DNA of 64,000 nt from Scyliorhinus canicula (lineage: Eukaryota), in the NCBI RefSeq assembly GCF_902713615.1, contig NC_052154.1, positions 159,256,754 to 159,320,753 of the forward strand, written 5' to 3'. How positions within the stretch are numbered: position 1 is the stretch's first letter; every line of letters begins with the position of its first letter. Of this stretch, positions 237 through 38,674 are shown in pieces. The notes beneath the pieces are model-generated. The model was not told the DNA's origin and searched no databases. It worked only from the letters and a program-made list of their open reading frames with translations. Both the position numbers and the translations under genes were made by a program.

Positions 237-544
237 CTAAACATTCAGAACGAACACCTTCTCTATAATATCACTGGTTTTTGGGTGCTGAACTTCGCAG
301 GTGTACTCTGATGAACCTTCAATTGCGACAATAGGCAACTTTGTTACTGTGGAGTAAAGTCCATTGCTATCAATTTTGGGTGTTTCGATGCTTTGTTTAT
401 CCTTGTATTCCGTCCATCCCTTGCTCCAAATGATATGTATATCCGCTGGACAAAAATGATCAATCCTGCAAGTCAGAGTTGCGTTTTCACCCTTTTTGGG
501 ATGATCAGGAGAACACTTGATTTCTGATACTTTAGGAGTCACAG
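237..544 (-). CDS. Exon 10, post-TM C1-set-like domain 6, ending in TAG
   Basis: Acceptor gcatttttcacag|CT. TPKVSEIKC..ATLTCRIDHFCPADIHIIW..SNGLYS..YTCEVQH..VLNV then TAG (239-237) directly followed by gtacgt. Confidence 0.85.
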
Positions 545-3500
545 CTGTGAAAAATGCAGAAACAAAATCTGATTCTCAAAAATATCAACTGCAATCAGAC
601 TCCTAAAAATAAATTAATTTTTATGTTTTTTGAAGGGTTGAAAAGCTTTCTCAGTAACTATTCAAGTTGAATATTTATTTAAAGTTCCAAAGATAGGTAT
701 AACAGGATTAAAATTAATCTAGACAAACAAATTCTGTTGTTATCAGTGATATCCTGCCCCTCCCTTTGGCTGCACTGGTAGTCCTTGCCAATGGAATCGG
801 CACAGAAATCACCATCATGGTGCAAGCTTGAGCTAAATGCCCACTATTCTCACTTTAAAAATGAATCAAAAGTTGGCTTGCTCGGTCAAGGGTAACCAAA
901 TTTTTAACAGCCTGAAAATTAACTTTGACAAATGTGGAGTCTCATTCCTTCAGAAACAACATGAACATTTTAAAAATAGTTTTATATAAGTTTTTCTGTT
1001 TTGCACAATTTATGCATTTCCACTGATCCCATGTCTTTAAAAGCAGACAGATAGCAAAATAATGTGAATATTTTTACTTCCAACTTTGCTATCTGCATGC
1101 ATCAGTGATGATTCTTCAATCTTGTCTCCATACTACTTGACCTGCTCACAGATTCCCTGCTGAGCCCATTTCAGATGACGCTGGAAAAAAGGAAATCTCT
1201 ACTGACAAACCCAGTAAAGGTTTGTGAGCAGCCATACACGAGGTGAACAATGAAAATGGTTCCTTCATCATTTGGCAAAATAGAGCGACCATCTTTAATG
1301 CTGTCTTTATTTTAAAACGAATTACCAACAAAACCTGCTTTTCAAAACCTACAGAAAAGTTCAGTGTATGAGATGCACTCACCTTTAAGAGGCAGTTGAA
1401 TACGTCTTTTGAATACTGGTACATCAGTGTTAGAATTGTCTTTGTACTGAAAGTGTAAATCTCTTTCAAAGTCTTCTGCAGTCACTGTAAACTTCAGGTA
1501 ACTGTTTATTTTGTAAGTGTTTTCACTGTGAAGCACAGGCTTTGAATTTGTGACTCCTTCAATGCGCTCTGATGCTTTATACCATTCAACCGTAATATTG
1601 TCATGGGGAATTTCACATACTGAAGTCGACACAGATAAAGGTTGGCCATACAAAGGGCTCTCTGGCTTCAATGTGAACTCTGAAAATTTTGGTGAGCCTA
1701 TAAAGAGAAAATAATATATTTAATTAACACTAAAGGCCAAACAAAGCCGCATTTCATCTGCCAAGAAGTCTTCGGAATTATTTTTTTGGATAAATTTTGC
1801 TGGCAAGGTTGTCATTTGTTACTCACTGTTATTCACCCTCAAGGTGGCAGTAGACTGCAGCATGCAGGTTCCCACAGTATTATTAGGTAGAAAATTTCAC
1901 CCAGGTGTACTGAAGGAATGGCATTATATAGATATAGAACAGTACAGCACAGAACAGGCCCTTCGGCCCTCGATGTTGTGCCGAGCAATGATCACCCACG
2001 TATCCCAACAACCCCCCCCCCCCAACCTTATATGTACAAGTCATGTTGAGAACTTACTTGGAGAGAAACCAGAGTGGTGTTCAATGCGCCAGCTTTGCTA
2101 GACCTTGCTGCTGGCAAAGATCATGGGTTTGAGAGGTCCAGCTGGAGCAGCTTTGGCAACTTGTCACAGTGTTCCTTGTACATAGTACACATTGCAGCCA
2201 CAGTACACCAGAGGTGGAATAAGTGGGCATTTATACTAAACAAGGCGTCAACCAATTAGTCTGTCTAATTTTAGTTAACAGTGAGATTCTTCAGTGTTGC
2301 TGCAGTTCACCAAAAGAGTTACATGGATAGTATGCTATCACAGATTTTTGCCTTGTAGGTACGGAGTCGGGTGAGCCACTCGCCACAGAATACTGAGCCT
2401 CTGACCTGCTCTAGTGGCTGAGAAATATACGTGCCAGATCCAGCAGAGTTTCTGGTCATTGGTGACTCCAGGATATTGATGGCAGGGATTCAATGATAAT
2501 GCCATGGAATATCAAGAGGATGTGGTTAGATTTTCCTTCCCATTGTTATGAAGATGCGTTATATACGATATTAATCTATAATGTGATTAGCTGGGCTTTT
2601 TTCTAAGCAAAGGGTACTGGCTATAGGAGCTACTAGGCTGCATTAGTGAAGGATAGCTGCTGCTTTTGCAGAGACCCAGAATCTATGTGGCTCTCAGAGA
2701 AGGGTCCAGCTTGTGTGTGAAAAAATATGCTGGGTGTAGGATAATAAGATAGTTACCCCGTCTCTCTTCTGAAACCTCTCTCATCAAAGCTGAGCTGTTT
2801 GTAATGTGGAAAACCCACTCGAAGACTTCTCTGCAACAAACCAAGAGATCTCAAAAGGAGAATTGCAAATCAAGCAGCCATGACTGCAGTGACTGCTCCA
2901 ATGCGAAAAGGGACATTTTCAGCTATTAAAAAAAAGTCCTCTGGGACCATTTGTGAATATTTATTTCTGATTTGCAACTTGGGCCAATTTTTAAAGATAT
3001 GACACTAGAGTTTTATTTCAATTTGTGCATGCTGGAGGGGTGTCATTATGTGTGCTGTTTTTGCTTTAGTAGTCTGTTAAACACATTTTAAACCTTTTGT
3101 TGATATCTTTTGCACCCTTACCCGATTAAGGTTTAGCAACTAAAAGCTGTTAACTTAAGTAACCTGGCTGGCTTGTTTCGTGCACTGAGCTAATACACAT
3201 TAAATATATTGAATCGGCCACATTAGCCAGCTTTAAAATTCAAACTCTGTCACAACTAACTCAGGAGTGGGATAAAGAAAGGAATCCATTCACCCCTGCT
3301 AATCATACAAATTATGCAGTAAACAGACCTTTCATTGCTGTACACGTTTCCCTTAGCCTCCATAGGCCAAGATGAAGCAGAAAATGGTACTAACATTGGC
3401 AAATATAGTACAATTAGAGTGGGCCTGAGAGGCCGAGTGGCCTACTACTGCTCTCAATTCGTATGTATATTTTTCAGTAATGTTAATTAAGCAATGAACA

Positions 3501-6500
3501 CCCGTGGTAAATCGAGCCACTCTTATTCATATCAAAGAAAATGGAAATAAAGCTATAATTGCACAATTAAGATGTTTTAGCATTTCACAATACATTTCTA
3601 TTAACATCTTTGAAAAGCTGGAACTTCACCCTCATCAAATAGAAAATTTTAACTCACCTTTAAGAAATAGCTGGTAAAATTGCTTAAAAGGTTTGGTTGA
3701 AGATTTTGAATGACAAACTTCAATCCTATACTCGGCTTGATGATCATCAGCACTTGGAGTCAAGGTTACTGTGGAGATTTTGCTGTACAGACCATTTTCA
3801 CATAGCGAAGTTTCCATAATTCTTCCATATTTTACATCATCACATCTCACTTCATTTCTGAACCATTCAACTTGAATATCCTCTGGATAAAAGTCAATTA
3901 TCTTACAGGTTAAAGTCAATTCTCTCTCTAGTTCAGGAGTGGCGGGATCGCAGGTAATTTCAGAGACTTTAGGGAAAGACACTGAAATAAAAAGATTAAG
4001 AAAAGCTGAATTGCATCTTTCCGATCTTTGTTACAGACATACGTCCATCATTCCAAAATGCCACAGAAAAAGTGTTACTCAGTCCTTCTTTCCAACGAAC
4101 AACTGGAACATTATACAGGTCAGGAAAACTGTAGCTTCAATTGAGAGAATAGATTGATCTGTCATACGGTTGCCACTAAGATTTTGGGACATTACCTGAG
4201 CTTGCAACAGAGTAATTTATTTTATAGAATTTCAAACATTGGGAATATAGACAATGCAGTAATTGCACTGCTGATGTGTCATTCCACAGCAGAAAATAAT
4301 TTACTTTTATATGTAAAATTTACTAAATGAAGAACTTACTGTCTGATCAAACATTATTTCCTGAATACTGTTCACACTTTTGAGAGATAAGACATTGTAA
4401 TGTCCAATGCCATTTCATCAATGCCAGATCTACTTTTCGTATGCCTAAGAACAATGCAAACCAATTTCTTGTACCCAGTTTTGTCCCTTTTCCCCTTCCC
4501 TTCACTCGGATTAATTTAAGTATGGCATTCCAATGTTTAAAATTTAAAAACATAGAGCCTGGGGAACAAAAATATCCCAACAATGCACCGATAACTTTAA
4601 AACAGAATTTCATTTTGATGGCAGAGAACTGATTTTACCAGAGCCAAAGTAACATGGCTACCAGCATAACCTTTATCTCAACTGAAATTCCCTCTGAATA
4701 ACTTCTTGTAGCAGTGAAGTTCTCTTAAAAACCTATTTGGGGTACTATGACATTCACCTAACCATTCTGTACCATCAGAACTCTTTCAAATTCCAGTAAC
4801 ACCACCAGAAACAGCTGGCAATTGCATTCAAGCATAAAAGGCGGAGAGCACCACCATTAATTTCACCAAATTCATTTCATGAAATTAGAATTAGTATCAT
4901 AAATCAAACAGCCCCATTTTTAAATTGCAGAAATGTTTTCAAACTAAGAATAGACATACCTAAACTTTCAGGAATATATTCTGCAAACCTTGGATACATA
5001 AGAGTCTCATGTAGAACCTGGCATTTATATTTACTGTGTAGGTCTGATAACATTGCAGTAATTGTGCACAAACTGGTAAATTCATACAACTCATTTTCAG
5101 AATGAACTATTTCAGGGTTTTCTGTATTCATAATGATGTCTTCATTTTTCAACCATCGAACAGAAATATTTTTAGGGTAAAATGAATGCACTTTGCAAGT
5201 TAGAGTCAATTGTTCTCCAATCACAGGGTTCCCTGGTTCACTAATGATGGCATTAAGAGAAGGATAAGCTGCAACAGAAAAAAACGAGTAGATCATTAGA
5301 ACATGCATACATAAATTTACATATTTATCTCTCTCACATTGATGATGAGCTTTCTCATCTTCAATAATGGCCAGAACACTACCTTTACAATAATAGGTTC
5401 TTTAACATCCACCTTCAGAGGAATAAGACTCAGTTTAACATCTCCTTCAAAGGATGATACTGCAGCAGTGCAGCACTCATTCATAACGGTACTGAAGAGT
5501 CAGCCTTGAATATGGTTAGAACCCACAACATTCAAATGCCAACTGAGCAAAGACATTGGAACAGGAGAGAAGAAATTTGTGTAAAGTATGGAAGTATCCA
5601 CAGGCTCGTGTAGAAAAAGGATTTAAAATTGATGACTGATTAAAAGTATCTTGAGCCCACATGTTTTGGGCATGCCCGGAGCTCAGTGTGTTCTGGCAAG
5701 GGTTCCCGAGGGCAATGTCCAAGGTGCTTACCACACGGGTGGTGCCGAGTCCAGAGATAGCGATCTTTGGAGTGACAGAAGACCCGGGAGTTCAGGGGGC
5801 GAAAAAGGCTGACGTCTTGGCCTTTGCCTCCCTAGTAGCCCGGAGGGGGGGGGGGGGGGGGGGGCTCATTGGGATGGTGTGGGAAGACTGGGTCACGTGG
5901 GGTAATGTCTCTTTAATTGTTATTGTATATTCTCTTTTTGCATTATGTTAATGTTCACTCTAGTTTGTTTTGTTATTATGGTTACTACTGTTTTATTATG
6001 AAAAATTCTGCAAAACCTTAATAAAAATACTTTTTTTTAAAAAGTATCTTGAGGCAATTCACAATCTGGGATCCACCTATTGGGAAGGGGACAATGCAGG
6101 GGAGGAGATTGATTATAAATCAGAATGGGAAAGGAAATATTTTTAAAAGCTCCAAAACGCTTTCCAACCGATGACTGTAATTAGGAAATATGGCAACCAA
6201 TTTGTGCACAGCACGTTCTCAGAAATGTCAATGCAATAAAGGCCTGATGGAATGTTAACGGAATAAATTATGACAAAATGAAAAAGAGATGGCATATTGG
6301 AATTCAAAGTAGAAAACACTAGAAATAAACAGCAGGTCCACTAGCTTCTGTAAAAAGAGAACATGTTAATGTTTTAGATATGGACTCTTAACGATGAAGG
6401 GAACAGATTCTGCAATAATACTATTTTCCACTGTGCCCCACAAACATTAAGCAGTCTAAGTTAAGGTATAGAATCAACTCTATGCGGGATACCTTGGCAA

Positions 6501-9500
6501 GGATGTCTGTTCCAGCTCAATGAACTTTCTTATTGCAACAGCTTTCTATTTTTGCACAATTACTACTCTTGTATGACAAGGATAGCTTATAATTGGGATG
6601 TTTAGTTTTACTATCGATTCTATTGCTTCTGAGTGGACAAATGAAGTGCCTCCTGCAACAGATATTAGTGGGAAGGCTGTTATGACGTGGTCAGGGATTG
6701 ATGGTCACAATCACACCTTGGGTTGCTCCTCATCAACCACACAGTGCAGATTGGGTTGAATGTCACCCACTGTTGTTGGTGGAGGTTGAAGTCGGTGACC
6801 TCAGTGATGGATCAGTTGGTTCTTTATGTTCCATGTGTCCACAATCTGTCCATCTGGGTAACTCAACAACAGCTGCATGGATATTAGATGCAGCATCCCA
6901 GAAAGGTCAGCATGCTTTTAACAAAATTCCTTGTGGTTTTTCAACTCCTTAAGTATGACAGGCTGAGAAATGTGAGGCAACACCAGGTGTCAGTTAGAGT
7001 GAACCCAAGTGCCCTTGGCATTGTAGGAGTGTTTTCAGGGACTGAGTTTTGAGCTGGCTTTTACGTGGGGATCCTCCCCCTTAGTTACGGTTCAGGTAAA
7101 CACAAAGACCCGCAAAGACAGCAGCTCTGGTTAAGATGGCTTTATTTTCCAAGCTTGGTCAACATTCGAGGGAGAGTGATTTGTATAAACGCCAAAACCA
7201 CTCTGCTTTACATTGCCTTAGGTCGAACAGTTATACAATTTCCAAAAATCAGTAGCCCACCCCAGTTTGACTCGATCCAATCCTTGTAGCTGTCCATTTT
7301 ACCTTGACCAATGAATTGTACTTTAGGCAGCATGGTGACTGCGTTATTAGCTCATGATTTAACCCCATCCTGTTCCCTGACCATCTGCTGTCTTTCAGGA
7401 TCCTTGCATCTGTTGCTCTCTTGCCCTCTCCTACTCCCATTTCTCTTATCTTGGTTGGTTCGTGCTTGTACCATTACCTATAGATCCTCAGACAGACAAT
7501 GTAAAGGGCTGGAATAGGCTCCTGAAGCTACTGATCAGAACTGCTTATTAAGCTGGCTGTGTTATTGCTGACCACATTATTTCTGTTTGTCTTAGGAATG
7601 TGGTCAAGTTAGCTAGCTGAAATCCCATCCTACATTGCAGTCACAACTACTAGCAAGAGTTTAAATACTTGTTACTGCTTTGTTCTAAGAATACATGGTT
7701 AATGGTTAATAATGATTGGTAGGTATACTTCATACGATTAGTTTCAATCCTCAATAAACAAACTTATGTAGAGCTATTCTAGTGTTATCCTAGCTATCTA
7801 GTTTTGAGGGGTCTCATCTCAGAAACACCTCCCCCCCCTTCAGGCATGTCAAAGATCAACACGTGCAACTGCAGGCCTGTGTGGCAGAGCAGTATTCTGC
7901 AGCACTATCTTTTTCACATTCATACAGCAAAAGGCCTGCACCAAATTCTGCGATGTTCATCTATGTCCATGACTTTTCACTGACACAGACATCAGTACTG
8001 AAGGAAGCAAATAGGATGCACACCAAGACCTAGACATGTTGGAATGTCACTTTTGACCTTCACCCAAAATACTTGGGTGTCACCCTGGACAGAACTCTCA
8101 CTTATTGGCTTCATTTTGTCAACATTATCCATCAAATAAAAACCTGGCTGCACCTGTTGTAATATCTCATGGGGAAACACTTCACACCACAAGAGTAACA
8201 TTAGTCCGTTTCTTCAGATAATGTGCAAAAGTACTCTGGATGTTATATAGACAAGGGTAGTTCTTTATGGAATTTAGTTCATCATGTTTAATAAACTTTC
8301 TAGAAATTTATGGAAGATATAGGCAATCTGAAGGGTTGGAATAGGGTGGTACCATGACGTAGCATAAATATATTCAAATATAAATAAGATGACCATCACT
8401 CCCTTTTAATGGCCTATAAGAAGTTTAAAGGTGAAGTCAGCTCCAGCTTAATGGTCTCAGGTCATAGAATGAGTGCAGGAGGAGGCCATTTGGCCCATCG
8501 AGCCTGCACCGGAAAGAGCACTTAAGCCCACACCTCCAACCTATCCCAGTAACCCCATGTAACCTTTTTTGGACACTAAGGGCAATTTAGAATGGCCAAT
8601 CCACCTAACCTGCAGATCTTTGGGCTGTGGGAGGAAGCTGGAGCACCCGGAGGAAACCCATGCAGACACAGAGAGAACGTGCAGACTCCACACAGACAGT
8701 GACCCAAGCCGGGAATCGAACCTGGGACCCTGGAGCTGTGAAGCAACAGTGCTAACCACTGTGCTACCCAGCCGCCCACCATGGAATAGTCTCACCCAGA
8801 CAGGCCACAGAAAGAAATACCTTTACAAATGTTCAGATTTGCAATAGTTGGTCACATCCATACAATTAAACATTTGGAAATGCTTAATCTGACAACAGAT
8901 GCCCGGAGTGGATGTCTGTTCTATTCCCTCATATTGAAATTCTTAACAGCAATGTCAGAGAAAAGAAGGCACCAACGCATTTTAAAAGAGATTGATCAAA
9001 AACTGTGTTCGTGTTACCTTTTACGTTCAGTTGAACATGCTTCACTGCTGGATTTCTCAAACTAACATGTCCAACTTCACACGAATATTGACTGTTTTCA
9101 TCTTCTTGGATGGTTGCACGGAAGAGCAGCATGCTGCAGACACTGAGAGTGTGGTCGGAATAACTAAATGAAACCAGATAATGGGAATATTTGTCGGGAT
9201 AGAAATTCTCTTCAGCTCCATTGTTGTGCTCCACCAAATCGAATTTCTCTCCATCTATTATTTTATACCATGTGATCTTCAGAGGATGTGGCTTAAAGAA
9301 ATTTATCGGACAAGTCAGCGTAACAGAATTGTTATGATGCACAACTGGAGGTTGAATTATATTAGCCAATTTAGGAGGAACTGAAGAGGAGAAAAAAACA
9401 AAGCATTAGTTTTAATGACACACAACTTCAAGATAAATATTCTTGGTTTATCTTTTTTATAATAGAATAGAATCCCTACAATTCAGAAGGAGGCCATTCG

Positions 9501-21500: not shown

Positions 21501-22330
21501 CGAGGAGCCGGAGCGGGAGCGGAGGAGCCGGAGCGGAGGAGCCGGAGCGGCGACAGGGGGGCCCAACAGCAGCAGGTCCATCCCCTCTCCCTCCCCCCCC
21601 CCCCCACGCGGGCCAGGAGCGGTGCGGCGGCGGCGGCCCCTCTTCTCTCCCCCCCCCCCCCACGCGGGCCAGGAGCGGTGCGGCGGCGGCGGCCCCTCTT
21701 CTCTCCCCCCCCCCCCCCCCCCCGCGGGCCAGGGGCGGTGCGGCGGCCCCTCTTCTCCTCCCCCCCCCCCCCCCCAGCCAGCAGCGGGGACCCCCCCCCC
21801 AGCCAGCAGCGGGGACCCCCCCCCCCCCCAGCCAGCAGCGGGGACCCCCCCCCCCCAGCCAGCAGCGGGGACCCCCCCCCCCCCAGCCAGCAGCGGGGAC
21901 ACAACCCCCCCCCCAGCCAGCAGCGGGGACACAACCCCCCCCCCCCCCCCCAGCCAGCAGCGGGGACACAACCCCCCCCCCCCCCAGCCAGCAGCGGGGA
22001 CACAACCCCCCCCCCCCCCCCAGCCAGGACACAACCCCCCCCCCAGCCAGCAGCGGGGACACACCCCCCCCCCCCAGCCAGCAGCGGGGACACAACCCCC
22101 CCCCCCCCCCCCCAGCCAGCAGCGGGGACACAACCCCCCCCCCCCAACCAGCAGCGACCACCGGCCCACTCGCCCCTCCCCCCCCCCCCCCCCCAACTGC
22201 TGTGACCACCACGTGGCAAAGACAAAGGGACTCTCTCTCCTGGTTGAGTGGGGAAAAAAGAAAAAGAGACTTGTATTTCTGTTCTTCCCAAAAGAAAACT
22301 GGTAAAGAGAAAAGGGTAGGGGAAATAAAT

Positions 22331-22379
<49 letters not shown>

Positions 22380-28182: not shown

Positions 28183-28213
<31 letters not shown>

Positions 28214-31200: not shown

Positions 31201-34200
31201 AATGGTGCCAGAGGACTAGAGGGCAACTGGTGTTGATTCCTATGCTTAAAAAGAGAATTGAACACATGGCCGAATGGATGGCCAAACAGAAAGCCTAGCT
31301 AGTGTAGAGGTTAGGGGTAACTAATCAGACTGGCAAAAGGTAGGACCGCTTTGTTCACCATTTACATTAACAGTTTGGACTCTGGAATCAAAGTACAATT
31401 CCAAACCCGCATAAGACAGCAAATTGGAGGCTGGACGTGTCCATGATTCATAAGGATGATCCAGAACTGCAAGGTTATAGTTATCAAGAAAGACTTACAA
31501 GTTGGGGGTCTTTTCTCTTGGATCGAGAAGCTGAAGGGGACCTGCTGGTTTGGCTACAACGTAACAAAAAGGTTTCATGACCAGTTGGACCAAAATGCTT
31601 TTTGCTATATCGCAGACTCAATATAACTGAATGAATGTGACATATTCCGGAGGTAAAAGGAGGTGTACAAATGCAAGTTCTTCCTTTCTTAACACAGAGT
31701 AGCATATACATTTCAGAGAAGCCTGACGATGTATGTGGGAACAATTAACCGGTTTCAGTTCCACATGCAAAAAATATATAAGCAGTTCTTATAGATAAAT
31801 CATATTTAACAGCATATATTTGTGTATTATTTACTTCTCAAAATGCTGCCTTACAAGACCAACACTTTCAATTTGTACTCTTGCTATTGATTTAACTAAC
31901 TAATGATGTATAATGTATTTAAGTTAAATAGTTTGATACCAACATGTTTATCTGTATTTTTGAGAACTACGACTCAGGATAAATGTGGCCAAGCTGTGAA
32001 GTTTACATTGATCTTACTCTGGGTTAGTTATAGTTAATTGCATATACCTGGACCAGACCCCAGAATTTTGAATTGGAAAAGAGAAGCTCCAGCATTCGTA
32101 CAAATACACTGTATAAAACCATAATCAAGCAATTTATTTTTACATTTCCTTCGTTCCATTATTAGAATTTAGAAAACATCAAGCAAATAAGAGCTCTATT
32201 AATCTGGTTGATTCCCTGAGAGAGCTCTGCCTTCAGAGAAACAGAACATTGACTTGGTTTCTCTCTCCTCAAACTTGAATTTATCCAGCAGTTTTTGTTT
32301 TAATTTCAGACTTCCCGCATGCACAGTATTTTGCTTTTATTTTAATTGAGCTCTGCATGGCTAACTGGTCAGGATTTTTTATAAATTTTTATTGTTGTAT
32401 CAAGATTACAGTGTGCCGGAAGGAACAGATCTTCATGGGTGTGGAAGTGAAGGTAAAGGAAAACTGCTCAAAAAAGCCTCCTCCTACATCTGCTGGGATG
32501 AAAGCTGTCTGAATACTTCCCAAACTTTAATTTTAATGCTGCTTTCTTGATTATAGAATTAATAGTGAGTTTCACCCACTTTATTTCCCACTAACTCATG
32601 CAACTTACCCTATTTGCTACCTTTGATTAGTCCTTTCAGTGATCAACCGTGAGACTTTACTGTGCATTACATGGATAAACTGCTTCCAACATGTAAATGA
32701 AGTCCAGAACACAGCTTCTCAACACATAACAATGGCCCAATAATGCAAGTACACAAATTAGGTCAGAAAGCACAGGGAGGCACATTGGTTAGCACTGCTG
32801 CCTCACGGCACCGAGGACCCGGGGTCGGGATCAACCCCGGGTCACTATCCGTGTGGAATTGGCACATTCTCCCCGTGTCTGCGTCGATCTCACCCCCACA
32901 ACCCAAAAAGACGTGCAGCGTAGGTGGGTTGGCCACGTTAAATTGCCCCTTGATTGGAAAAAATAAATTGGGTAGTCGAAATTCATTTTAAAAAAGAGAA
33001 ATTATTAAACACCAGATGCAATCTATTTATTTTATAAATTATTCTGATGAAAGGTCATCGAGCTGAAACTTTAACTCTGCTTTCTCTCCACAGATTTGCC
33101 TAACCTGAGGATTTCCAGCATCTGCAGCAGTTTGCTTTTGTAATTAAGGGCATTCCCTCTACAAGATTAAGCTTCCGAAAGTTAGAAAGACGACTGCAAG
33201 TTATAAATGACAGTAACTGCAATAAGTCAGCTTACCTAAAACCTCGAGCTTCACTGTCTGAGAGGCCTTATTATTTGGTGGAATAACAACTTCACATTTA
33301 TACTGTCCAGTGTGTTTAAATGTGACATGTCTTAGCAACAGTGACATGTTTCCATTTAGAATGGAGCTTTCCAAAATATCGGCTTCCGGCCATGCCTCCT
33401 GTACATCTCCCGACGTGTAGGAATAGACTGTTGATGCTTCAGTGCCACGGGTGACAGTCCACAAAACGCCCAAATTCTTCGATTCCAATGTAGCCCCAAT
33501 GAGTTCAGAGATTTCGCACAGCAGCAGACTATTTTCATTATAAATTACTTCCACTGGACTTTGACTCACTTTCAACTTCAACTTGCTTTCTGCAGATTTA
33601 ATAAGAACAGATAATGTCAAAAGACCATTCCATCTTAACAGCTCTACTTCGGCCCCCTGCCACATTTCTTAATCTAACCTTCTATTCCTCCCTTCCTCGT
33701 GTATTTATCCAACCCATTCCAATGCTCTCCTGGTCAGTCTCCCATCTTCCAACCTTCCTAAACTTCAGCTCATTCTGAATTTTACTGCCCGCATCCTACA
33801 CATCAAATTGCGGGGTCAGTTAGCTCAGTTGGCTGGGCGGCGGATTCATGATGCGGTGCAACAGCGCGGGTTCAATTCCCATAAGGGAAGTGGCAACATC
33901 TACATTTACTCATCAAATCCGTTTTATCTAACCTGACCCCTGTGCTTGCTGACCTACACTGGTCCCACAAGACAAAATATTCTCCTCATTATTTTCAAAT
34001 CCTCCCGGGGCCTTCCTATCTCTGTAATCTTCCCAAACTCTGACAGCCTCCAAGTTTTTTTTAAAATAATTTTTATTGGAATTTTTTGAAAAATATATAT
34101 CAACAAAATAATAACAACAATAATAGTAATAAACACCCCCCCCCCCCCCCCCGGCACCCGTAACAACGCATATAACAAACCCCCCCACCCGCCCCAACCC

Positions 34201-37200
34201 CAATAAACAGCAAGATAAATTAACAATAAGCAAATTAACTTAAACACTATCCCCCTAAACCCCCCCTCCCTCCCTTTCCCCCCTCCCTCTCTTTCCCCCC
34301 TCCCTCTCTTTCCCCCCCCTCCCTCTCTTTCCCCCCCCCCCTCCCTCTCTTTCCCCCACCCTCCCTCTCTCTCCCCCCTCCGGACTCCCTCCCTCTCTCC
34401 CTTTCTTCCCCCCTCCCTCCCTTCCCCCCCCTCCCTTTTCCCCCTCCCTCCCTCCCTTTCCCCCCCTCCCTTCCCCCCCTCTCTCCCTTTCCCCCCTCCC
34501 TTCCCTCCTCCCCCCTCTCCTCCTCTCCCCCCCTCCTCCCCTCCCCTCCCTCTCCCCCTCCCCTCTCTTCCCCCTCTCTTCCCCCCTCCCCCTACCCCCC
34601 TCTTCCCCTCCCCCCTCCCTCCCCTCTTTNNNNNNNNNNNNNNNNNNNNNNNNNNNNNNNNNNNNNNNNNNNNNNNNNNNNNNNNNNNNNNNNNNNNNNN
34701 NNNNNNNNNNNNNNNNNNNNNNNNNNNNNNNNNNNNNNNNNNNNNNNNNNNNNNNNNNNNNNNNNNNNNNNNNNNNNNNNTTCCCCCCCCCTCCCCCTTC
34801 CCCCCTCCCCTCCCCAAATTTTGAGGGTAGCCGTTACCACCGGGCTCGTAGTGTACCTCGTTGGAGGGAGCCGCAGCAGCACCGTTACCAGTGCCTTCAG
34901 GCTCGTGCCTCCACAGGACGCCATCTCCATCCGTTTCCATGCTGCCCCCTCCCCATCCATTACCCACTTACGTACCAGCGAGACATTAGCCGCCCAATAG
35001 TACCCAGAGAGGTTGGGCAGCGCCAGCCCCCTCTATCCCTGCCCCGCTCCAAAAAGACCCTCCTTACCCTCGGAGTCCCGTGCGCCCAAACAAATCCCAG
35101 AATGCTGCTGTTCATCCTCCTAAAAAGCCCCTCGGAACAAAAATGGGGAGGCACTGAAACAAAAAAAACCTAGGGAGCACCGTCATTTTAACGGACTGTA
35201 CTCTACCCGCCAACGACAACATGTCCCACCATTTAAATTCCTCCTCCATCTGCTCCACCAACCTAATAAAATTGAGCTTGTGCAGAGTCCCCCAGCTCCT
35301 AGCCACCTGAACCCCCAGGTACCTAAAATTCCTCACTGCCCTCTTTGGCGGGAGCCTACCAATCCCCTCCTCCTGATCTCCCGGGTGTACGACAAACAGC
35401 TCACTCTTGCCCAGGTTCACTTTATATCCCGAGAAACTCCCGAACTCAGCAAGAATCTCCATCACCTCCGGCATTCCCCCCCCACGGGGTCTGCTACATA
35501 CAACAGCAAGTCGTCCGAATACAGCGACACTCGGTGTTCCTCCCCACCTCGCACCAAAACCCTCCAACTCCTCGACTCCCTGAGAGCCATAGCAAGAGGC
35601 TCAATTGCCAGCGCAAAAAGCAAGGGGGACAGGGGGCACCCCTGCCTCGTCCCACGGTGGAGCCTGTAGTACTCGGACCTCTTCCCATTTGTCGCTACAC
35701 TCGCCATCGGGGCCACGTACAGCAACCTCACCCATTTAATAAACCCCACCCCAAACCCGAACCTCTCCAATACCTCCCACAAGTACCCCCACTCAACCCT
35801 GTCAGTCAAAGGCCTTCTCCGCATCCAATGCCACCACAATCTCCGCCTCTCCTTCTGCTGCCGGCATCGTTATCACATTTAGCAGCCTTCGCACGTTAGC
35901 GTTCAGCTGCCTCCCCTTCACAAAACCCATCTGATCTTCATGTACCACCCCCGGCACCCAGTCCTCTATTCTAGTGGCCAAGATCTTCGCCAGCAACTTG
36001 GCGTCTACATTCAGCAGTGAAATCGACCTGTATGATCCGCACTGCAAGGGGTCCTTATCACACTTCAGGATCAGGGAGATTAGCGCCCGAGACATCGTCG
36101 GGGGCAGAACACCCCCCCTCCCATGTCTCGTTGAAGGTCCTAACCAAAAGGGGGCCCAGCAGGTCGGCATATTTCTTATAAATTTCAACCGGGAACCCAT
36201 CCGGTCCCGGTGCCTTCCCCGACTGCATGTGGCCAATCCCACTGACCAGCTCCTCCAACTCGATCGGCGCCCCCGGTCCCTCCACCTGCTATGCCTGCAC
36301 CCTTGGAAGTCGGAGCCTGTCCAAAAAACTCTCCATTCCCCCTCCCACCACCGGCAGCTCCGACCGGCACAGTTCCCTATAAAAGTCCCTAAAGAACTCA
36401 TTGACCTCTGCCCCCTGCCGCACCACATTTCCAACTCTATCCTTCACTCCACCAATCTCCCTAGCCGTGTCCCGCTTACGAAGCTGATGCGCCAGCATCC
36501 TGCTCGCCTTCTCTCCATACTCATAGACCGCTCCCTGCGCCTTCCTCCACTGAGTCTCCGCCTTTCTGGTGGTCAATAAATCAAACATGGCCTGCAAGCT
36601 ACGCCGCTCCCCCAGCAATCCCTCCTCCGGGGCCTCCGCGTACCTCCTATCCACACTCAACAGCTCCTCCACCAGTCTCTCCCTCCTCTCCCTATGGGCT
36701 CGGATGGAGATCAGCTCCTCCCTAATCACTGCCTTCAGAGCCTCCTACACCATCCCCACCTGGACCTCCCCAGTATCATTGACCTCAAGGTACCTCTCAA
36801 TACATCCCCGAATCCTCCTACACACCTCCTCATCAGCCAACAACCCCACGTCCAGACGCCAAAGCGGGCGCTGGTCCCGCACCTCTCCCATCTCCAGATC
36901 CACCCAATGCGGAGCGGCAACATGCCGAACTTCACCTGCTTTCCATGGTCCGAAATCGCAATAGCCGCATACTCGGCCTCCTCCAACTTCGGGACCAGTC
37001 CCCTACTCAAAACAAAGAAATCAATTCGGGAATAAACCCTGTGCACATGGGAGAAAAAGGAGTACTCCCGAGCCCTCGGCCTCCCGAACCTCCAGGGATC
37101 CACGCCTCCCATCTGGTCCATAAACCCCCTCAACACCTTGGCCGCCGCCGGCCTCCTGTCTGTCCTTGAACTAGGACGATCCAGTAGGGGATCCAGCACC

Positions 37201-38674
37201 GTATTGAAGTCCCCCCCCCCCCACCTCCAGGCCAGGAATGCGGCCCAACATACGCCTCATGAAACCAGCATCATCCCAATTTGGGGCGTACACAATAACC
37301 AATGAAAAGAGAAAAGTGTTGCCAAAGCATTTTGTCTTGCACTCATCAGAACAAACACTGCAGCAACACCAATCAGCGTTCAGTGCAATAGACAACTTCA
37401 ACTTTAACTCCCAGTGCTCAAGCTATAAGTGCCATCTCATTGGCTCTCCTCTTGACATAAATTAATGATGCTGACAGATGACCTACACTGGGACCCTCCA
37501 GCTCTGCATGGCCGACTCAGTCACTGATGAAACCACTGGAGGCAGCGATACATCATTACGGAGGTCACATTAGCTCAAAACCATTCACTGCAGACTCATT
37601 GTTTTTTGACTGAGTTACAAACAAAATTTAATGTGTAATAATTTATTTACATTCATCCATGCGCTTTTACTATTTCCACAGCTGATCTAATTAGGTTGAG
37701 GGAACTCTTGGCTGATTTCCTCCTCAAACTCCGACATAAATGTAATAGCCTAATCGCCAACTCCGCAATAAATGCTGACTTGACAATGATGCTCATATAT
37801 CATTAATTAGCTTGAAACAATGTAGCCAGCTGTCACCATAAGAACATAAGAAACAGGAAGCAGCACTCATCCACTGGTTTTTGAGACCAAGTCTGGCCCC
37901 TCGAGCCTGCTTCGCCATTCAATAAGATCATGGACTGTCTGACTGTGACTTCAATTCCAATTTTCTGCCTGCCCAACCCTCTACCAACAACGCCCTCAAT
38001 AACCTTTCCACTCCCTGGTAGATCAAAAGTCCACCTTGCATTCAATGATCCAGCCTCAGTATCATGTGGCAGTGTGCCACTTGTCCCTCTAAGACATTGG
38101 ACACAGACCGCTGGGGGGGGTCACATAACATTTAGCATATGGGAGTCTCATTCCTGGAGGAATTAAATTAACAACCCCTTTTGAGAGGGAAAAAAACCCC
38201 TCCTCATCTTGGGTCTCTGGGGAAACCTCTTACTTTGAAACCATAAAGGGCATTAAAGTTGACTTTTCCAAAGGAAGTTTCTCGAAGTGGGGGTGGGAGG
38301 AGAACTCTGTTGGGAGATGGGGGGGGTGAGTGGGTGGGTCGCCGGGGGGGGGGGGGGGGGGGGACTGGAGAGCGCTAGCAGGAGGGTGGGCCGAACGGCC
38401 GCGTCTGTTGGCAGAGGCCGGGAACAGGGGTTTGTGACCTTGCCCTTTAGCCCGCCCGGCTTCGGCACGGCCGCTGTCACCAATCTCCAGGCCCAGGGAT
38501 CATCGCCAAGCGTCCGGGTGCAAACCCCACCCTGGGCGAGCGCCACTCCCGCCTCCCCCGACCCTCAAAATCCGGCGGGACGAGCGCCGCTCCCGCCGCC
38601 CGTCCTTTACCTGAAAACCGTGCCAGAGTCACCAGCGCCACCAGAAGCGGCCACAAGTTCCCGGTCCGGCCCAT
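237..38674 (-). CDS. NCR3LG1: Multi-exon B7-H6/NCR3LG1-like IgSF gene, predicted 967 aa: SP - V - C1 - TM - six C1-set-like domains
   Basis: Ten exons: 38611-38674, 33236-33589, 30717-31043, 28420-28536, 16368-16790, 9018-9380, 4960-5268, 3658-3981, 1383-1697, 237-544. All junctions are GT-AG and phase 1. The lengths sum to 2904 nt = 967 codons + TAG with no internal stop. The family call rests on V/C1 motifs compared from memory with human B7-H6, so treat it as 'like', not proven orthology. Joining of the post-TM exons is inferred. Confidence 0.75.
1383..1697 (-). CDS. Exon 9, post-TM degenerate C1-like domain 5, lacking both canonical Cys
   Basis: Acceptor ttttctctttatag|GC, donor AAAG|gtgagt, 315 nt open. 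SPKFSEF..LSVSTSV..PHDNITVEW..NTYKINSYL..LHFQY. Confidence 0.8.
3658..3981 (-). CDS. Exon 8, post-TM C1-set-like domain 4, lacking the F-strand Cys
   Basis: Acceptor ctttttatttcag|TG, donor AAAG|gtgagt, 324 nt. LTLTCKIIDFYPEDIQVEW..NGLYS..YRIEVCH. Confidence 0.88.
4960..5268 (-). CDS. Exon 7, post-TM C1-set-like domain 3
   Basis: Acceptor ttttctgttgcag|CT, donor TTAG|gtatgt, 309 nt. LTLTCKVHSFYPKNISVRW..YKCQVLHETL. Confidence 0.88.
5656..6039 (+). mobile_element. 5'-truncated L1 3' fragment with 14-bp TSD and internal deletion
   Basis: TSD aaaagtatcttgag at 5642-5655 and 6040-6053. HMFWACP..DVLAFASLVARR matches the ORF2 C-terminus of the 21-28 kb L1, then jumps to a G20 run and the 3'UTR with AATAAA. 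Confidence 0.85.
7066..7827 (-). mobile_element. Possible retroviral/LTR-element long terminal repeat
   Basis: On the minus strand: purine tract aaggggggggagg, then TG...CA over about 760 bp with AATAAA near the 3' end (7141-7146). No TSD or second copy seen. Confidence 0.3.
8465..8778 (-). mobile_element. HE1/V-SINE-type tRNA SINE
   Basis: Box A/B head, V core ctgcatgggtttcctccgggtgctccagcttcctcccacag, CR1-derived tail. Confidence 0.85.
9018..9380 (-). CDS. Exon 6, post-TM C1-set-like domain 2
   Basis: Acceptor ttctcctcttcag|TT, donor AAAG|gtaaca, 363 nt. VTLTCPINFFKPHPLKITW..YSCEVGHVSL. Confidence 0.85.
9465..10180 (-). mobile_element. Cluster of V-SINE and CR1-tail fragments
   Basis: Two V cores plus the tail atagaacagtacagcacagaacaggcccttcggccc. 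Confidence 0.8.
12340..15390 (+). mobile_element. Degraded CR1/L2-group (jockey-type RT) LINE, EN + RT
   Basis: RGGG..VGDFN..RSDH (APE); KAMGPDNIP, NYHPIS, ALDIKAAFDRV, GVPQGS, FADDC, YKAQVRSVMEYS, with frameshifts; 3' tail aaatgctggcct. Confidence 0.88.
16368..16790 (-). CDS. Exon 5, post-TM C1-set-like domain 1 with a long internal insertion
   Basis: Acceptor tttttattcctag|TT, donor GGAG|gtaagc, 423 nt. APKVSEI..FVCQVSGYRPDVITVSW..NNDGTFSVSSVL..ITCKVMH. Confidence 0.85.
17170..18150. mobile_element. Cluster of jockey-type LINE 3' fragments in both orientations
   Basis: catctacaagatgcactgcag..aaggttccttaggcagca motif on plus, then inverted, then plus. Confidence 0.7.
18395..18675 (-). mobile_element. 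V-SINE variant with ggcgactaggggc/cacagtaacttc-type tail
   Basis: V core and tRNA head. The same tail occurs alone at about 15585-15700 and 16895-16985. Confidence 0.75.
18940..19797. mobile_element. GC-rich MITE-like element with imperfect TIRs
   Basis: Ends gagcgcgatctacc / ggttagatcgggccc, flanked by tat on both sides. Confidence 0.6.
19810..20985 (+). mobile_element. Penelope-like element remnant (RT thumb + GIY-YIG)
   Basis: LKFTFKIEQSNELPSLDLLI, then VVYEF.C.CD..VG..LVDHIK (GIY-YIG-like), and the tail atcctgatgagtgcaagacgaaaagctt. Many stops. Confidence 0.7.
21337..22155 (+). repeat. Three consecutive GC-rich tandem arrays in the L1 5'UTR
   Basis: A ~22-nt unit ggaggagccgaggagccggagc, then three ~60-nt units containing cgcgggccaggagcggtgcggcggc, then about 12 units of Cn-agccagcagcgggga(cacaa). 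Confidence 0.9.
22343..22390. repeat. (TA)n microsatellite in the L1 5'UTR
   Basis: Direct reading. Confidence 0.9.
22456..23481 (+). CDS. L1 ORF1p (coiled coil + RRM + CTD), intact, 341 aa
   Basis: Heptad-like region LEAQGKILEAQG, then RRQNIKIVGLPEG..DRAHR..PRAVIARL..IRIYEDF..FGMLYPAKLWV, typical L1 ORF1 motifs. Confidence 0.9.
   Translation: MKGKGEKKVPERSQEKGGTGSRLGKGKASSGERVNTRSGGKDASPHPEELDGRATSPLGLEGGVNWKEAFAEVVREQLQAFKAELKADAEAAAQAAVTRAMSGVQQVLTRLEKKVDAQGKILEAQGKILEAQGATIKELEKAATDASDRVISLERGMVKLSATQGSLKGRVDDQEISSRRQNIKIVGLPEGIEGRNPTTFVAAMLGSLVGRETFPTPPEMDRAHRSLRPKPKEGEKPRAVIARLHRYRDRETILRWAKENRACNWDGHAIRIYEDFGADIAKRRAEFNRAKAALYKNKVRFGMLYPAKLWVTYQHKEYFFTAPAEANRFVEEHGLEKRHGK
24256..28087 (+). 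pseudogene. L1 ORF2 (APE endonuclease, RT, Cys/His C-terminus) with two lesions
   Basis: TWNVRGL, LQETH, VYAPN, SDH, APGPDG, YRPISLL, GTRQGCPLSP, YADD, YLGI, CxxC..HMFWSC. There is an extra G in the run at 24700-24707 (GGDFN frameshift) and an in-frame TAG at 24845-24847. Confidence 0.9.
28420..28536 (-). CDS. NCR3LG1: Exon 4, transmembrane exon (E)AEIRLSTSSIVGSVIASIIISIALTALAIFLYMRFRYK
   Basis: Acceptor aactttttttttaacag|AA, donor AAAG|gtaaat, 117 nt, phase 1-1. An uncharged hydrophobic stretch of about 23 aa is followed by the basic stop-transfer RFRYK. Confidence 0.85.
28610..28995 (+). mobile_element. CR1 3' end fragment
   Basis: ETYKILTGLDRVDAGRMFP..FFTQRVVSLWN and the tail aagggccaaatggccttctcctgttcct. 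Confidence 0.8.
29466..30645 (+). mobile_element. Deu-domain-type tRNA SINE split by the CR1 insertion
   Basis: Box-A head at 29466-29515; box B and core resume at about 30331. The core ggaaatctgccgtccttacccggtc..acatgtgactccagaccc..gaaatggcctagcaagcca matches the AmnSINE1/SacSINE1 Deu core as recalled. Confidence 0.6.
29516..30330 (-). mobile_element. CR1 (HER1-like) 3' fragment nested in a SINE
   Basis: MLQLYRTLVRPHLGYSFQFWSPHYQKDVEALERVQ..RRLRGDL plus the CR1 3'UTR tail. Confidence 0.9.
30717..31043 (-). CDS. NCR3LG1: Exon 3, extracellular Ig C1-set domain, B7-H6-like
   Basis: Acceptor tcttggcag|CA, donor AAAG|gtcagt, 327 nt. LGCQLSGYYP..W..PTVKNPDGTCNV..FECRVTH resembles recalled B7-H6 PTIKNMDGTFNV..YQCVVRH. 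Confidence 0.9.
32772..32990 (+). mobile_element. V-SINE
   Basis: ggttagcactgctgcctcacggc..attctccccgtgtctgcgt..taaattgcccct. Confidence 0.8.
33236..33589 (-). CDS. NCR3LG1: Exon 2, non-rearranging Ig V-set domain, B7-H6-like
   Basis: Acceptor atctgcag|AA, donor TTAG|gtaagc, 354 nt. Motifs SLLLC..LGVLW..GNMSLLLRHVTFKHTGQYKCEVVIPPNNKASQTVKLEV resemble recalled B7-H6 [37 protein letters not shown]. Confidence 0.9.
34050..37297 (-). mobile_element. 5'-truncated, degraded L1 ORF2 (EN to RT) in intron 1, spanning the assembly gap
   Basis: VYAPNWDD, YSRIDFF, GKAPGPDGFP, RGTRQGCPLSP, YSDD, FRYLG across several frames. The A-rich tail with AATAAA lies at 34072-34077. Confidence 0.9.
34260..34815. 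repeat. Pyrimidine-only (C/T) low-complexity tract flanking a 151-N gap (34630-34780)
   Basis: Direct reading. Confidence 0.9.

What the first reader, a model, noticed from the sequence alone, without database searches (positions are those of the whole stretch)
237..38674. B7-H6-like membrane protein with a predicted cytoplasmic array of six C1-set Ig domains
Seen: SP, V and C1 exons, then a clean TM exon ending RFRYK, then six more C1-like exons on the same strand. All are phase 1 and join into one stop-free 967-aa ORF, and no second signal-peptide exon or non-repeat CpG island was seen between the TM and these exons. Established: C1-set domains (Ig/TCR constant, MHC, beta-2-microglobulin, tapasin, SIRP, B7-H6) are normally extracellular or luminal, and human B7-H6 is V-C1-TM with a non-Ig tail. 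Inference: about 680 aa of tandem C1 folds would face the cytosol, acting as an intracellular scaffold or sensor on a likely NKp30 (NCR3) ligand. I cannot tell whether this architecture has been reported in other ectotherm B7-H6 genes.
Basis: partly seen in the sequence, partly recalled or inferred. Interest (0 to 1): 0.92.

Follow-up and report, generated by a model that had tools for sequence, protein, structure and literature searches.

The report
B7-H6-like gene with cytoplasmic Ig array
This catshark gene encodes a relative of the NK-cell ligand B7-H6 in which six antibody-type (C1-set) domains follow the membrane anchor; real transcripts carry this order, it is conserved from sharks to reptiles, and it predicts antibody-type domains inside the cell, where none are known.

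Summary
Ten minus-strand exons (SP, V, C1, TM, six C1) splice into a 967-aa ORF identical to RefSeq XP_038663978.1, Scyliorhinus canicula LOC119971841, "uncharacterized". The assembly gap at 34630-34780 lies in intron 1 and touches no exon.

RNA contigs from four studies join V, C1a and the TM exon at the predicted sites. They leave the genome exactly at donor 28420 and run on for up to 3852 nt. Letters across 28420->16790 were not seen.

Three skate RNA contigs and an elephant-shark UniProt entry (provenance not checked) encode V-C1-TM-C1xN in one ORF. The order recurs in chimaeras, bichirs, coelacanth, lungfish, amphibians, turtles, lizards and crocodilians, where NCBI often names the gene NCR3LG1 (B7-H6).

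Cytosolic placement of the array is inferred:
- The hydrophobic segment is strong, with flank charges of -0.5 (N side) and +2.9 (C side).
- The canonical Ig disulfide pair is kept in 27-69% of post-TM domains, against 89% of pre-TM domains and 98% of extracellular multi-C1 controls.
- N-glycosylation sequons are enriched 1.70-fold before the TM and 1.15-fold after it.

Caveat: exact TM-exon-skipped, hence secreted, isoforms are annotated for two relatives.

No paper describing the architecture was found. Topology and function are untested.

The parts
38611..38674 (-). Exon 1: start codon at 38674 and signal peptide (21 aa plus 1 base), phase-1 donor
   Evidence: Sequence and GT donor. 100% tblastn match to P0176 residues 1-21.
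34630..34780 (.). Assembly gap (N) inside intron 1. It is not in any exon.
   Evidence: Position relative to the exons. The flanks translate to low-complexity G/E/R repeats.
33236..33589 (-). Exon 2: V-set Ig domain with a germline-joined G strand
   Evidence: Pfam V-set, 6.1e-10. RNA joint 33236->31043 in 4 runs. Acceptor 33589 is fixed by identity to P0176.
30717..31043 (-). Exon 3: membrane-proximal extracellular C1-set domain (C1a), the most conserved domain
   Evidence: Pfam C1-set. Mean ortholog identity 0.72. RNA joints on both sides.
28420..28536 (-). Exon 4: 39-codon symmetric (phase 1/1) transmembrane exon with a stop-transfer flank RFRYK
   Evidence: Sequence. KD19 = 2.61 at residues 262-280. 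AF2 helix at 264-284. Included in the contigs of 4 RNA runs, which leave the genome exactly at 28420.
16368..16790 (-). Exon 5: first post-TM C1-set domain (C1b) with a roughly 35-aa variable insertion
   Evidence: Pfam C1-set, 1e-09. Held by RNA runs X10, X11, X3 and X7. The insertion has low pLDDT at residues 346-368.
9018..9380 (-). Exon 6: post-TM C1-set domain C1c. Both canonical Cys are nearly invariant across the family.
4960..5268 (-). Exon 7: post-TM C1-set domain C1d
   Evidence: Pfam C1-set, 2.9e-15. pLDDT about 90.
3658..3981 (-). Exon 8: post-TM C1-set domain C1e, which lacks the F-strand Cys
   Evidence: Pfam C1-set, 1.4e-12. Alignment.
1383..1697 (-). Exon 9: post-TM C1-set domain C1f, which lacks both canonical Cys
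   Evidence: Pfam C1-set, 7.4e-06. Alignment.
237..544 (-). Exon 10: last C1-set domain (C1g). The stop TAG at 239-237 sits exactly where a donor (TAG|GTACGT) would be, and all orthologs end here.
22456..28087 (+). Antisense LINE with long ORF1 (341 aa) and ORF2 (1068 aa). It fills half of the 11.6-kb intron between the TM exon and C1b.
   Evidence: ORF list and 0.56-0.58 GC content. Family assignment was not tested.

Best explanation
The locus is Scyliorhinus canicula LOC119971841, a long-form member of the B7-H6 (NCR3LG1) family. Its main mRNA encodes signal peptide, V-set domain, C1-set domain, one transmembrane helix, then six tandem C1-set Ig domains, and it ends right after the last domain. 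With a cleaved signal peptide and a single strongly hydrophobic stop-transfer anchor with a positive C-side flank, V-C1 faces outside as a probable NKp30-type ligand. The roughly 680-aa six-domain rod then faces the cytosol. Shown here: exon structure, transcript inclusion of the TM exon, conservation of the order across jawed vertebrates, confident Ig folds, and sequence signatures of a reducing, non-glycosylating environment after the TM. Inferred: the topology itself. Speculative: that the rod is a docking or scaffold platform coupling the inside of the cell to display of the ligand.
For: 1. Gene model: the spliced ORF is identical to XP_038663978.1. 2. RNA: exon joints V->C1a->TM in four runs from four studies, with contigs continuing 353-3852 nt past donor 28420. 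The same runs hold C1b. 3. Full-length transcripts elsewhere: three skate Logan contigs of 3.1-3.9 kb encode V-C1-TM-6xC1. One was checked and carries a 5' UTR with an in-frame stop, the signal peptide and 804 nt of 3' UTR. The elephant-shark UniProt entry V9K7L7 has the same order; its cDNA origin is my recollection, not a tool result. 4. Conservation: orthologs of 941-974 aa in about 20 chondrichthyans all have the TM and the same C-terminus. Post-TM domains are 49-63% identical on average, against 61% for V. Most of the 150 family representatives have the order C-T-CCC..., and reptile and frog homologues retrieved with the alligator post-TM array are mostly 812-1198 aa; their TM position was not checked individually. 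5. Anchor: median KD19 2.69, flank charges -0.53 (N side) and +2.87 (C side), C greater than N in 77 of 87. 6. Disulfide: both canonical Cys are kept in 89% of pre-TM domains, 27-69% of post-TM domains and 98% of 47 control domains from multi-C1 proteins with a C-terminal TM. The Trp of strand C is kept at 96-98% in post-TM domains 2-6 (65% in the first), and the replacements are hydrophobic. 7. Sequons: observed/expected is 1.70 before the TM and 1.15 after it in 78 representatives. 8. AF2: mean pLDDT 83.2, post-TM domains 85-94, helix at 264-284.
Against: There is no experimental topology. In this gene's own orthologs, four of the six post-TM domains still carry both canonical Cys. The post-TM part has 7 sequons against 5.3 expected, and three post-TM sequons are shared by 9-13 of 17 orthologs. 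That is no more than control motifs show, so the test has little power. Exact TM-exon-skipped isoforms exist in RefSeq for two relatives, so the domains can also be made as a secreted chain. Logan contigs drop rare variants, so skipping in catshark is not excluded. Letters across the 28420->16790 junction were not seen.
Confidence: 0.65

Rival explanations
1. Dual-product gene in which the functionally relevant context of C1b-g is extracellular. Skipping the symmetric 117-nt TM cassette gives a secreted V + 7 C1 chain that resembles an antibody heavy chain. The TM-containing mRNA would then give only a membrane form whose tail is tolerated.
For: The TM exon is phase 1/1 and 39 codons long. RefSeq isoforms lacking exactly the TM exon exist for Microcaecilia LOC115468918 (X3, minus 37 aa) and a Heterodontus paralogue (X3, minus 31 aa). 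In this gene's orthologs, four of six post-TM domains keep the Cys pair. The array resembles Ig heavy-chain constant regions, SIRP and UrIg2 in sequence.
Against: The TM exon is included in the assembled contig of all four catshark RNA runs, and no 30717->elsewhere joint was listed. It is also included in three skate contigs and in about 65 of the roughly 70 stored isoforms and orthologs; only two are confirmed TM-exon skips. Family-wide loss of the disulfide pair and the lack of sequon enrichment after the TM are not expected for secreted C1 arrays, whose controls keep the pair at 98%.
Confidence: 0.22
2. Two transcription units, or a fused gene model. V-C1-TM would be one gene with an unseen short tail, and the six C1 exons would belong to another gene with its own leader.
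For: The TM exon and C1b are separated by an 11.6-kb intron half-filled by a LINE. The junction letters were not displayed.
Against: A 4679-nt RNA contig carries V, C1a and TM plus 3852 further nt and leaves the genome exactly at the GT donor. Single-ORF skate contigs span the junction. The order and the domain count are conserved in many lineages.
Confidence: 0.03
3. The post-TM domains are a decaying relic: translated but functionless. This would explain the lost cysteines.
For: C1e and C1f lack canonical Cys. Sequons are near random expectation.
Against: One-to-one domain orthology and 49-63% identity are kept across chondrichthyans, and the same six-domain plan is kept in lungfish, newt, caecilian and alligator. 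The strand-C Trp is kept at 96-98% in post-TM domains 2-6. pLDDT is 85-94. There are no stops or frameshifts.
Confidence: 0.05

Closest known systems
Human B7-H6 / NCR3LG1 (PDB 3pv6, 3pv7, 6yjp)
   Same: Signal peptide, V-set domain, C1-set domain and a single TM. It is the best solved sequence relative of the shark V-C1a (E 1.7e-23 over both domains). The modelled ectodomain superposes with a target-normalised TM-score of 0.85-0.89 and rmsd of 2.1-3.3 A.
   Different: The human tail is short and non-Ig (about 170 aa, reported as Gag-like; this is from my own knowledge, not tested here). The shark protein has about 680 aa of six C1-set domains after the TM.
RefSeq 'natural cytotoxicity triggering receptor 3 ligand 1' models of reptiles and thorny skate (e.g. 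Alligator XP_019332669, Amblyraja XP_032894882)
   Same: The alligator and skate models were checked and have V-C1-TM-C1xN at about 965 aa. Turtle, gecko and lizard models of 812-1034 aa were retrieved with the alligator post-TM array. The skate protein is the ortholog of the window's gene.
   Different: They are automatic annotations without any published description that I could find. The reptile proteins are only about 30% identical to the shark protein.
UrIg / UrIg2 (PMC12227049; PDB 9dmx)
   Same: A non-rearranging V domain followed by many C1-type domains in elasmobranchs. The C1 arrays are detectably similar (E 2.5e-15).
   Different: UrIg2 has its TM at the C-terminus, after all C domains, and a split leader of antigen-receptor type. 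All its Ig domains are extracellular and it forms disulfide-linked dimers. Here the TM sits after the first C domain.
Cytosolic Ig arrays of muscle proteins (titin I65-I70, PDB 3b43; obscurin, MyBP-C)
   Same: A linear rod of tandem Ig domains with short linkers. Titin is the top Foldseek match for the whole model. Like them, many post-TM domains lack the B-F disulfide.
   Different: Those are I-set domains of soluble sarcomeric proteins. Here the domains score as C1-set, a type otherwise found in extracellular or luminal immune molecules, and they are tethered to a membrane ligand.
Butyrophilins (B7-related V-C-TM proteins with a folded cytosolic B30.2 domain)
   Same: A B7-family ectodomain coupled through one TM to a large folded cytosolic module. 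This is a working analogy for inside-out coupling and comes from my own knowledge.
   Different: The cytosolic module there is B30.2/PRYSPRY, not Ig. No sequence relationship of the tails was tested or expected.

Membership tests
B7-H6 / NCR3LG1 family | N-terminal IgV plus IgC1 ectodomain most similar to B7-H6 | tested here: met
   Pfam V-set and C1-set. Top PDB sequence hits are B7-H6 chains at E about 1e-23 over both domains, with the next hit (CEA) at 1e-17. Foldseek target-normalised TM-score of 0.89 to 3pv7.
B7-H6 / NCR3LG1 family | Type I membrane protein with a single TM after the C domain | tested here: met
   Signal peptide exon. One hydrophobic segment at residues 262-280, KD 2.61. 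AF2 helix. Prediction only.
B7-H6 / NCR3LG1 family | Orthology to mammalian NCR3LG1 (synteny, phylogeny) | tested here: inconclusive
   NCBI names the skate ortholog and the reptile homologues NCR3LG1. No tree or synteny analysis was done. The gene lies in a tandem cluster with paralogues.
B7-H6 / NCR3LG1 family | Binds NKp30 (NCR3) | not testable with these tools
   Needs a binding assay with shark NKp30.
B7-H6 / NCR3LG1 family | Short non-Ig cytoplasmic tail, as in the human protein | tested here: not met
   Six C1-set domains follow the TM. This is the point of difference.
C1-set Ig domains (Pfam PF07654) | Profile match above the curated cut-off | tested here: met
   All seven C exons score 26.7-56.8 bits against a cut-off of 21.
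C1-set Ig domains (Pfam PF07654) | Canonical B-F disulfide pair and strand-C Trp | tested here: inconclusive
   Trp is present in all. The Cys pair is present in C1a, b, c, d and g, half lost in C1e and fully lost in C1f. Family-wide, 27-69% of post-TM domains keep both Cys, against 98% of controls.
C1-set Ig domains (Pfam PF07654) | Extracellular or luminal location | not testable with these tools
   Predicted cytosolic for six of the seven. Needs protease protection or tagging.
UrIg / UrIg2 non-rearranging antigen-receptor-like genes | VJ domain plus C1 domains with the TM and cytoplasmic part at the C-terminal end | tested here: not met
   The TM lies between C1a and C1b, and the protein ends without a second TM. 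UrIg2 description is in PMC12227049.

The most novel reading that the evidence does not exclude
C1-set immunoglobulin domains work inside the cell. On this reading, ancestral B7-H6 was a two-faced Ig protein. It had an NKp30-type ligand outside and a conserved six-domain C1 rod in the cytosol, which docks intracellular partners and couples cell state (stress, infection) to ligand display or signalling. Possible partners are cytoskeleton or B30.2/PRYSPRY proteins, by analogy with TRIM21 binding Fc in the cytosol. Mammals later swapped this rod for a short non-Ig tail. A minority TM-skipped isoform would release the same chain as a soluble eight-domain molecule.
Probability: 0.45. Interest if true: 0.9.

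Novelty: new variant of a known kind. Interest (0 to 1): 0.78.

Why it matters
C1-set domains are the hallmark of the extracellular adaptive-immune toolkit: Ig/TCR constant regions, MHC, beta-2-microglobulin, tapasin, SIRP and B7-H6. A conserved array of six such domains on the cytosolic side of a likely NK-receptor ligand would be the first intracellular use of this domain type.

It would also change how the evolution of B7-H6 is read, because the long form would be ancestral and the mammalian tail a replacement. And it would give a concrete handle on how display of a stress ligand is controlled from inside the cell.

The claim is directly testable with tagged constructs from any of the many species that carry the gene. 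If the secreted isoform turns out to be the relevant one instead, the gene would be a germline-encoded, eight-domain soluble antibody-like chain. That would also be of interest for the origin of antigen receptors.

Tried and rejected
1. Letter-level proof of the 28420->16790 junction. Read laying allows one call of at most 6 kb and the two exons are 11.6 kb apart.

2. Catshark Logan proteins spanning the junction. None are in the protein collection; the 90% cluster has only NCBI and UniRef members.

3. Sequon conservation among 17 orthologs. Occupancy of N-x-S/T columns (0.18 post-TM, 0.25 ecto) is the same as for control motifs, so the test is uninformative.

4. Fused gene models. Rejected by the RNA contigs.

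5. UrIg/UrIg2 membership. Rejected on TM position.

6. Literature. Flajnik et al. 2012 (Immunogenetics) and Ohta & Flajnik 2015, the papers most likely to mention it, are not held, so prior description is not excluded.

7. Whole-model Foldseek. Apart from B7-H6 for the ectodomain, it gives only generic multi-Ig matches.

8. N-terminally truncated RefSeq isoforms (Chiloscyllium X2, S. torazame 808 aa, Alligator X2) were checked as possible TM-skipped forms. All keep the TM.

Full report
**What is in the window**

On the minus strand there are ten exons with canonical AG/GT borders, and all internal ones are in phase 1.
- Signal-peptide exon, 38674-38611.
- V exon, 33589-33236.
- C1 exon (C1a), 31043-30717.
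- A 117-nt transmembrane exon, 28536-28420. It encodes an uncharged hydrophobic stretch followed by RFRYK.
- Six further Ig exons: 16790-16368, 9380-9018, 5268-4960, 3981-3658, 1697-1383 and 544-237.

Pfam scores the V exon as V-set and all seven C exons as C1-set above the curated cut-off. The spliced ORF is 967 aa and ends with a TAG at 239-237, exactly where the last domain's donor would be. It is identical to RefSeq XP_038663978.1, "uncharacterized protein LOC119971841" of Scyliorhinus canicula.

**The assembly gap**

The N run at 34630-34780 lies inside intron 1, between the leader exon and the V exon, in low-complexity G/A-rich sequence. No exon and no reading frame crosses it. The leader-to-V join is supported by three things: the RefSeq model, orthologs that align from residue 1, and 26 extra letters 5' of the V exon in the RNA contigs. 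I did not read its letters.

**Transcripts**

Many RNA runs of the organism hold both the C1a exon and the first post-TM exon. I laid the contigs of four runs from four studies on 28250-33700.
- The joints 33236->31043 and 30717->28536 appear in all four runs.
- In every run the contig carrying V, C1a and TM stops matching the genome exactly at donor 28420.
- Those contigs then continue for 3852, 3809, 721 and 353 nt.
- The six downstream exons add up to 2042 nt, so the longest contigs fit C1b-g plus about 1.8 kb of 3' UTR.
- No TM-skipping joint was listed.

Two limits apply. The letters beyond 28420 were not printed, and contigs drop rare variants.

Independent full-length evidence comes from other species. 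Three Logan RNA contigs of skates (3.1-3.9 kb) each encode V-C1-TM-6xC1 in one ORF. The one I fetched has a 5' UTR with an in-frame stop, the signal peptide, the whole CDS and 804 nt of 3' UTR. The elephant-shark UniProt entry V9K7L7 shows the same order in a paralogue; that it derives from cDNA is my recollection, not a tool result. The idea of two separate genes is thus practically excluded.

**Conservation**

A HMMER scan of 1.8 billion representatives with the C1b exon found a large family.
- In most of the 150 best representatives the order is C1, TM, then several C1.
- Orthologs of 941-974 aa exist in about 20 sharks, rays, skates and a chimaera. All have the TM in the same place and the same C-terminus.
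- Post-TM domains are conserved about as well as the V domain: 49-63% against 61% mean pairwise identity.
- The same plan occurs in bichir, coelacanth, lungfish, caecilian, newt and frogs including Xenopus.
- A search with the alligator post-TM array also retrieved turtle, gecko, lizard and crocodilian proteins of similar length, where NCBI often names the gene NCR3LG1. I confirmed the TM position in the alligator protein but not in each of the others.

The upstream neighbour in the window is a paralogue. One of its C1 exons lies at 55098-55436 and is 74% identical to a horn-shark family member.

**Is it B7-H6-like?**

The V-C1a part finds human B7-H6 chains as its best solved relatives, at E about 1e-23 over both domains. 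An AlphaFold2 model of the whole protein has a mean pLDDT of 83.2. Its ectodomain superposes on B7-H6 with a target-normalised TM-score of 0.85-0.89. The post-TM array resembles Ig heavy-chain constant regions, the SIRP C1 domains and UrIg2. In the model the six post-TM domains are confident beta-sandwiches with pLDDT 85-94. A helix spans residues 264-284, and only the linker before it and a 23-residue insertion in C1b are uncertain.

**Topology (inferred, not shown)**

A cleavable signal peptide plus one stop-transfer anchor gives an N-out, C-in protein, which puts the six C1 domains in the cytosol. Three sequence tests bear on this.
- **The anchor looks selected as an anchor.** In 87 family members the uncharged span has a median of 27 residues and the 19-residue hydropathy a median of 2.69. 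The N-side flank charge averages -0.53 and the C-side +2.87, with C greater than N in 77 of 87.
- **The canonical B-F cysteine pair decays only after the TM.**
  - It is kept in 89% of pre-TM domains.
  - It is kept in only 27-69% of post-TM domains, depending on position.
  - The replacements are hydrophobic (V, L, I, F, A), while the strand-C Trp stays at 96-98% in post-TM domains 2-6 and 65% in the first.
  - In 47 control domains from multi-C1 proteins with a C-terminal TM, found in the same search, the pair is kept in 98%.
  - In the catshark protein, C1e lacks one Cys and C1f lacks both.
- **Sequons are enriched only before the TM.** N-x-S/T is enriched 1.70-fold over shuffled expectation before the TM and 1.15-fold after it, in 78 representatives. 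A column-wise conservation test among orthologs had no power.

These signals fit domains that live in a reducing, non-glycosylating compartment.

**The complication**

The TM exon is a symmetric cassette. RefSeq lists isoforms that lack exactly this exon for a caecilian homologue (minus 37 aa) and a horn-shark paralogue (minus 31 aa). Such mRNAs would give a secreted V+7C chain. In this gene's orthologs, four of the six post-TM domains still have both cysteines. A dual-product gene therefore remains possible. I rate the secreted form as the main functional context at about 0.2, and the cytosolic array of the dominant mRNA at about 0.65.

**Comparison with known systems**

- Human B7-H6 shares the ectodomain and TM but has a short non-Ig tail.
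- UrIg and UrIg2 (PMC12227049) share the non-rearranging V plus many C1 domains, but carry the TM at the very end.
- Titin-type arrays share the cytosolic rod of Ig domains, but those domains are I-set and the proteins are soluble.
- Butyrophilins offer a functional analogy: a B7-like ectodomain with a folded cytosolic module.

**Literature and verdict**

Full-text searches found no paper that describes Ig domains after the TM of B7-H6 or cytosolic C1-set domains. The two most relevant papers, Flajnik et al. 2012 and Ohta & Flajnik 2015, could not be read.

The gene model itself is public. The architecture appears undescribed and its topology untested. I class it as a new variant of a known kind, with high interest that depends on a simple topology experiment.

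Noticed in passing
window 55098-55436 (-): A lone C1-set exon, 74% identical to residues 665-777 of a Heterodontus family member (P0007). It marks the 3' part of a tandem paralogue upstream of the gene. No further paralogue exons were detected between 39 and 55 kb.
   Followed up: partly
window 22456-28087 (+): A LINE antisense to the gene, with apparently intact ORF1 (341 aa) and ORF2 (1068 aa), inside the TM-C1b intron. It is flanked at 21.0-22.4 kb by a GC-rich Gly/Pro-coding simple repeat. It could be a young, possibly active element.
   Followed up: no
window 35100-37400 (-): A second, fragmented LINE-like reverse-transcriptase region in intron 1, next to the assembly gap and G/A-rich low-complexity sequence.
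   Followed up: no
P0154 (Microcaecilia X3) and P0160 (Heterodontus X3): RefSeq isoforms that lack exactly the TM exon (37 and 31 aa) and are otherwise identical to the long isoforms. They predict secreted all-Ig chains in two family members.
   Followed up: yes
window 33589-33615, 5' end of RNA contigs: Contigs from three different runs all begin exactly 26 letters upstream of the V exon. This suggests a branch point in the assembly graph inside the leader exon, from an allele or an alternative leader.
   Followed up: no
window 16368-16790 (-), residues about 346-368: C1b carries a roughly 35-residue insertion between strands C and E. It is variable in sequence, holds three sequons in catshark and is modelled with pLDDT below 50. 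An insertion at this position is seen across the family.
   Followed up: partly
window 237-239 (-): The stop codon TAG is followed by GTACGT, so it sits on what looks like a former phase-1 donor site. All orthologs end at this same position.
   Followed up: partly
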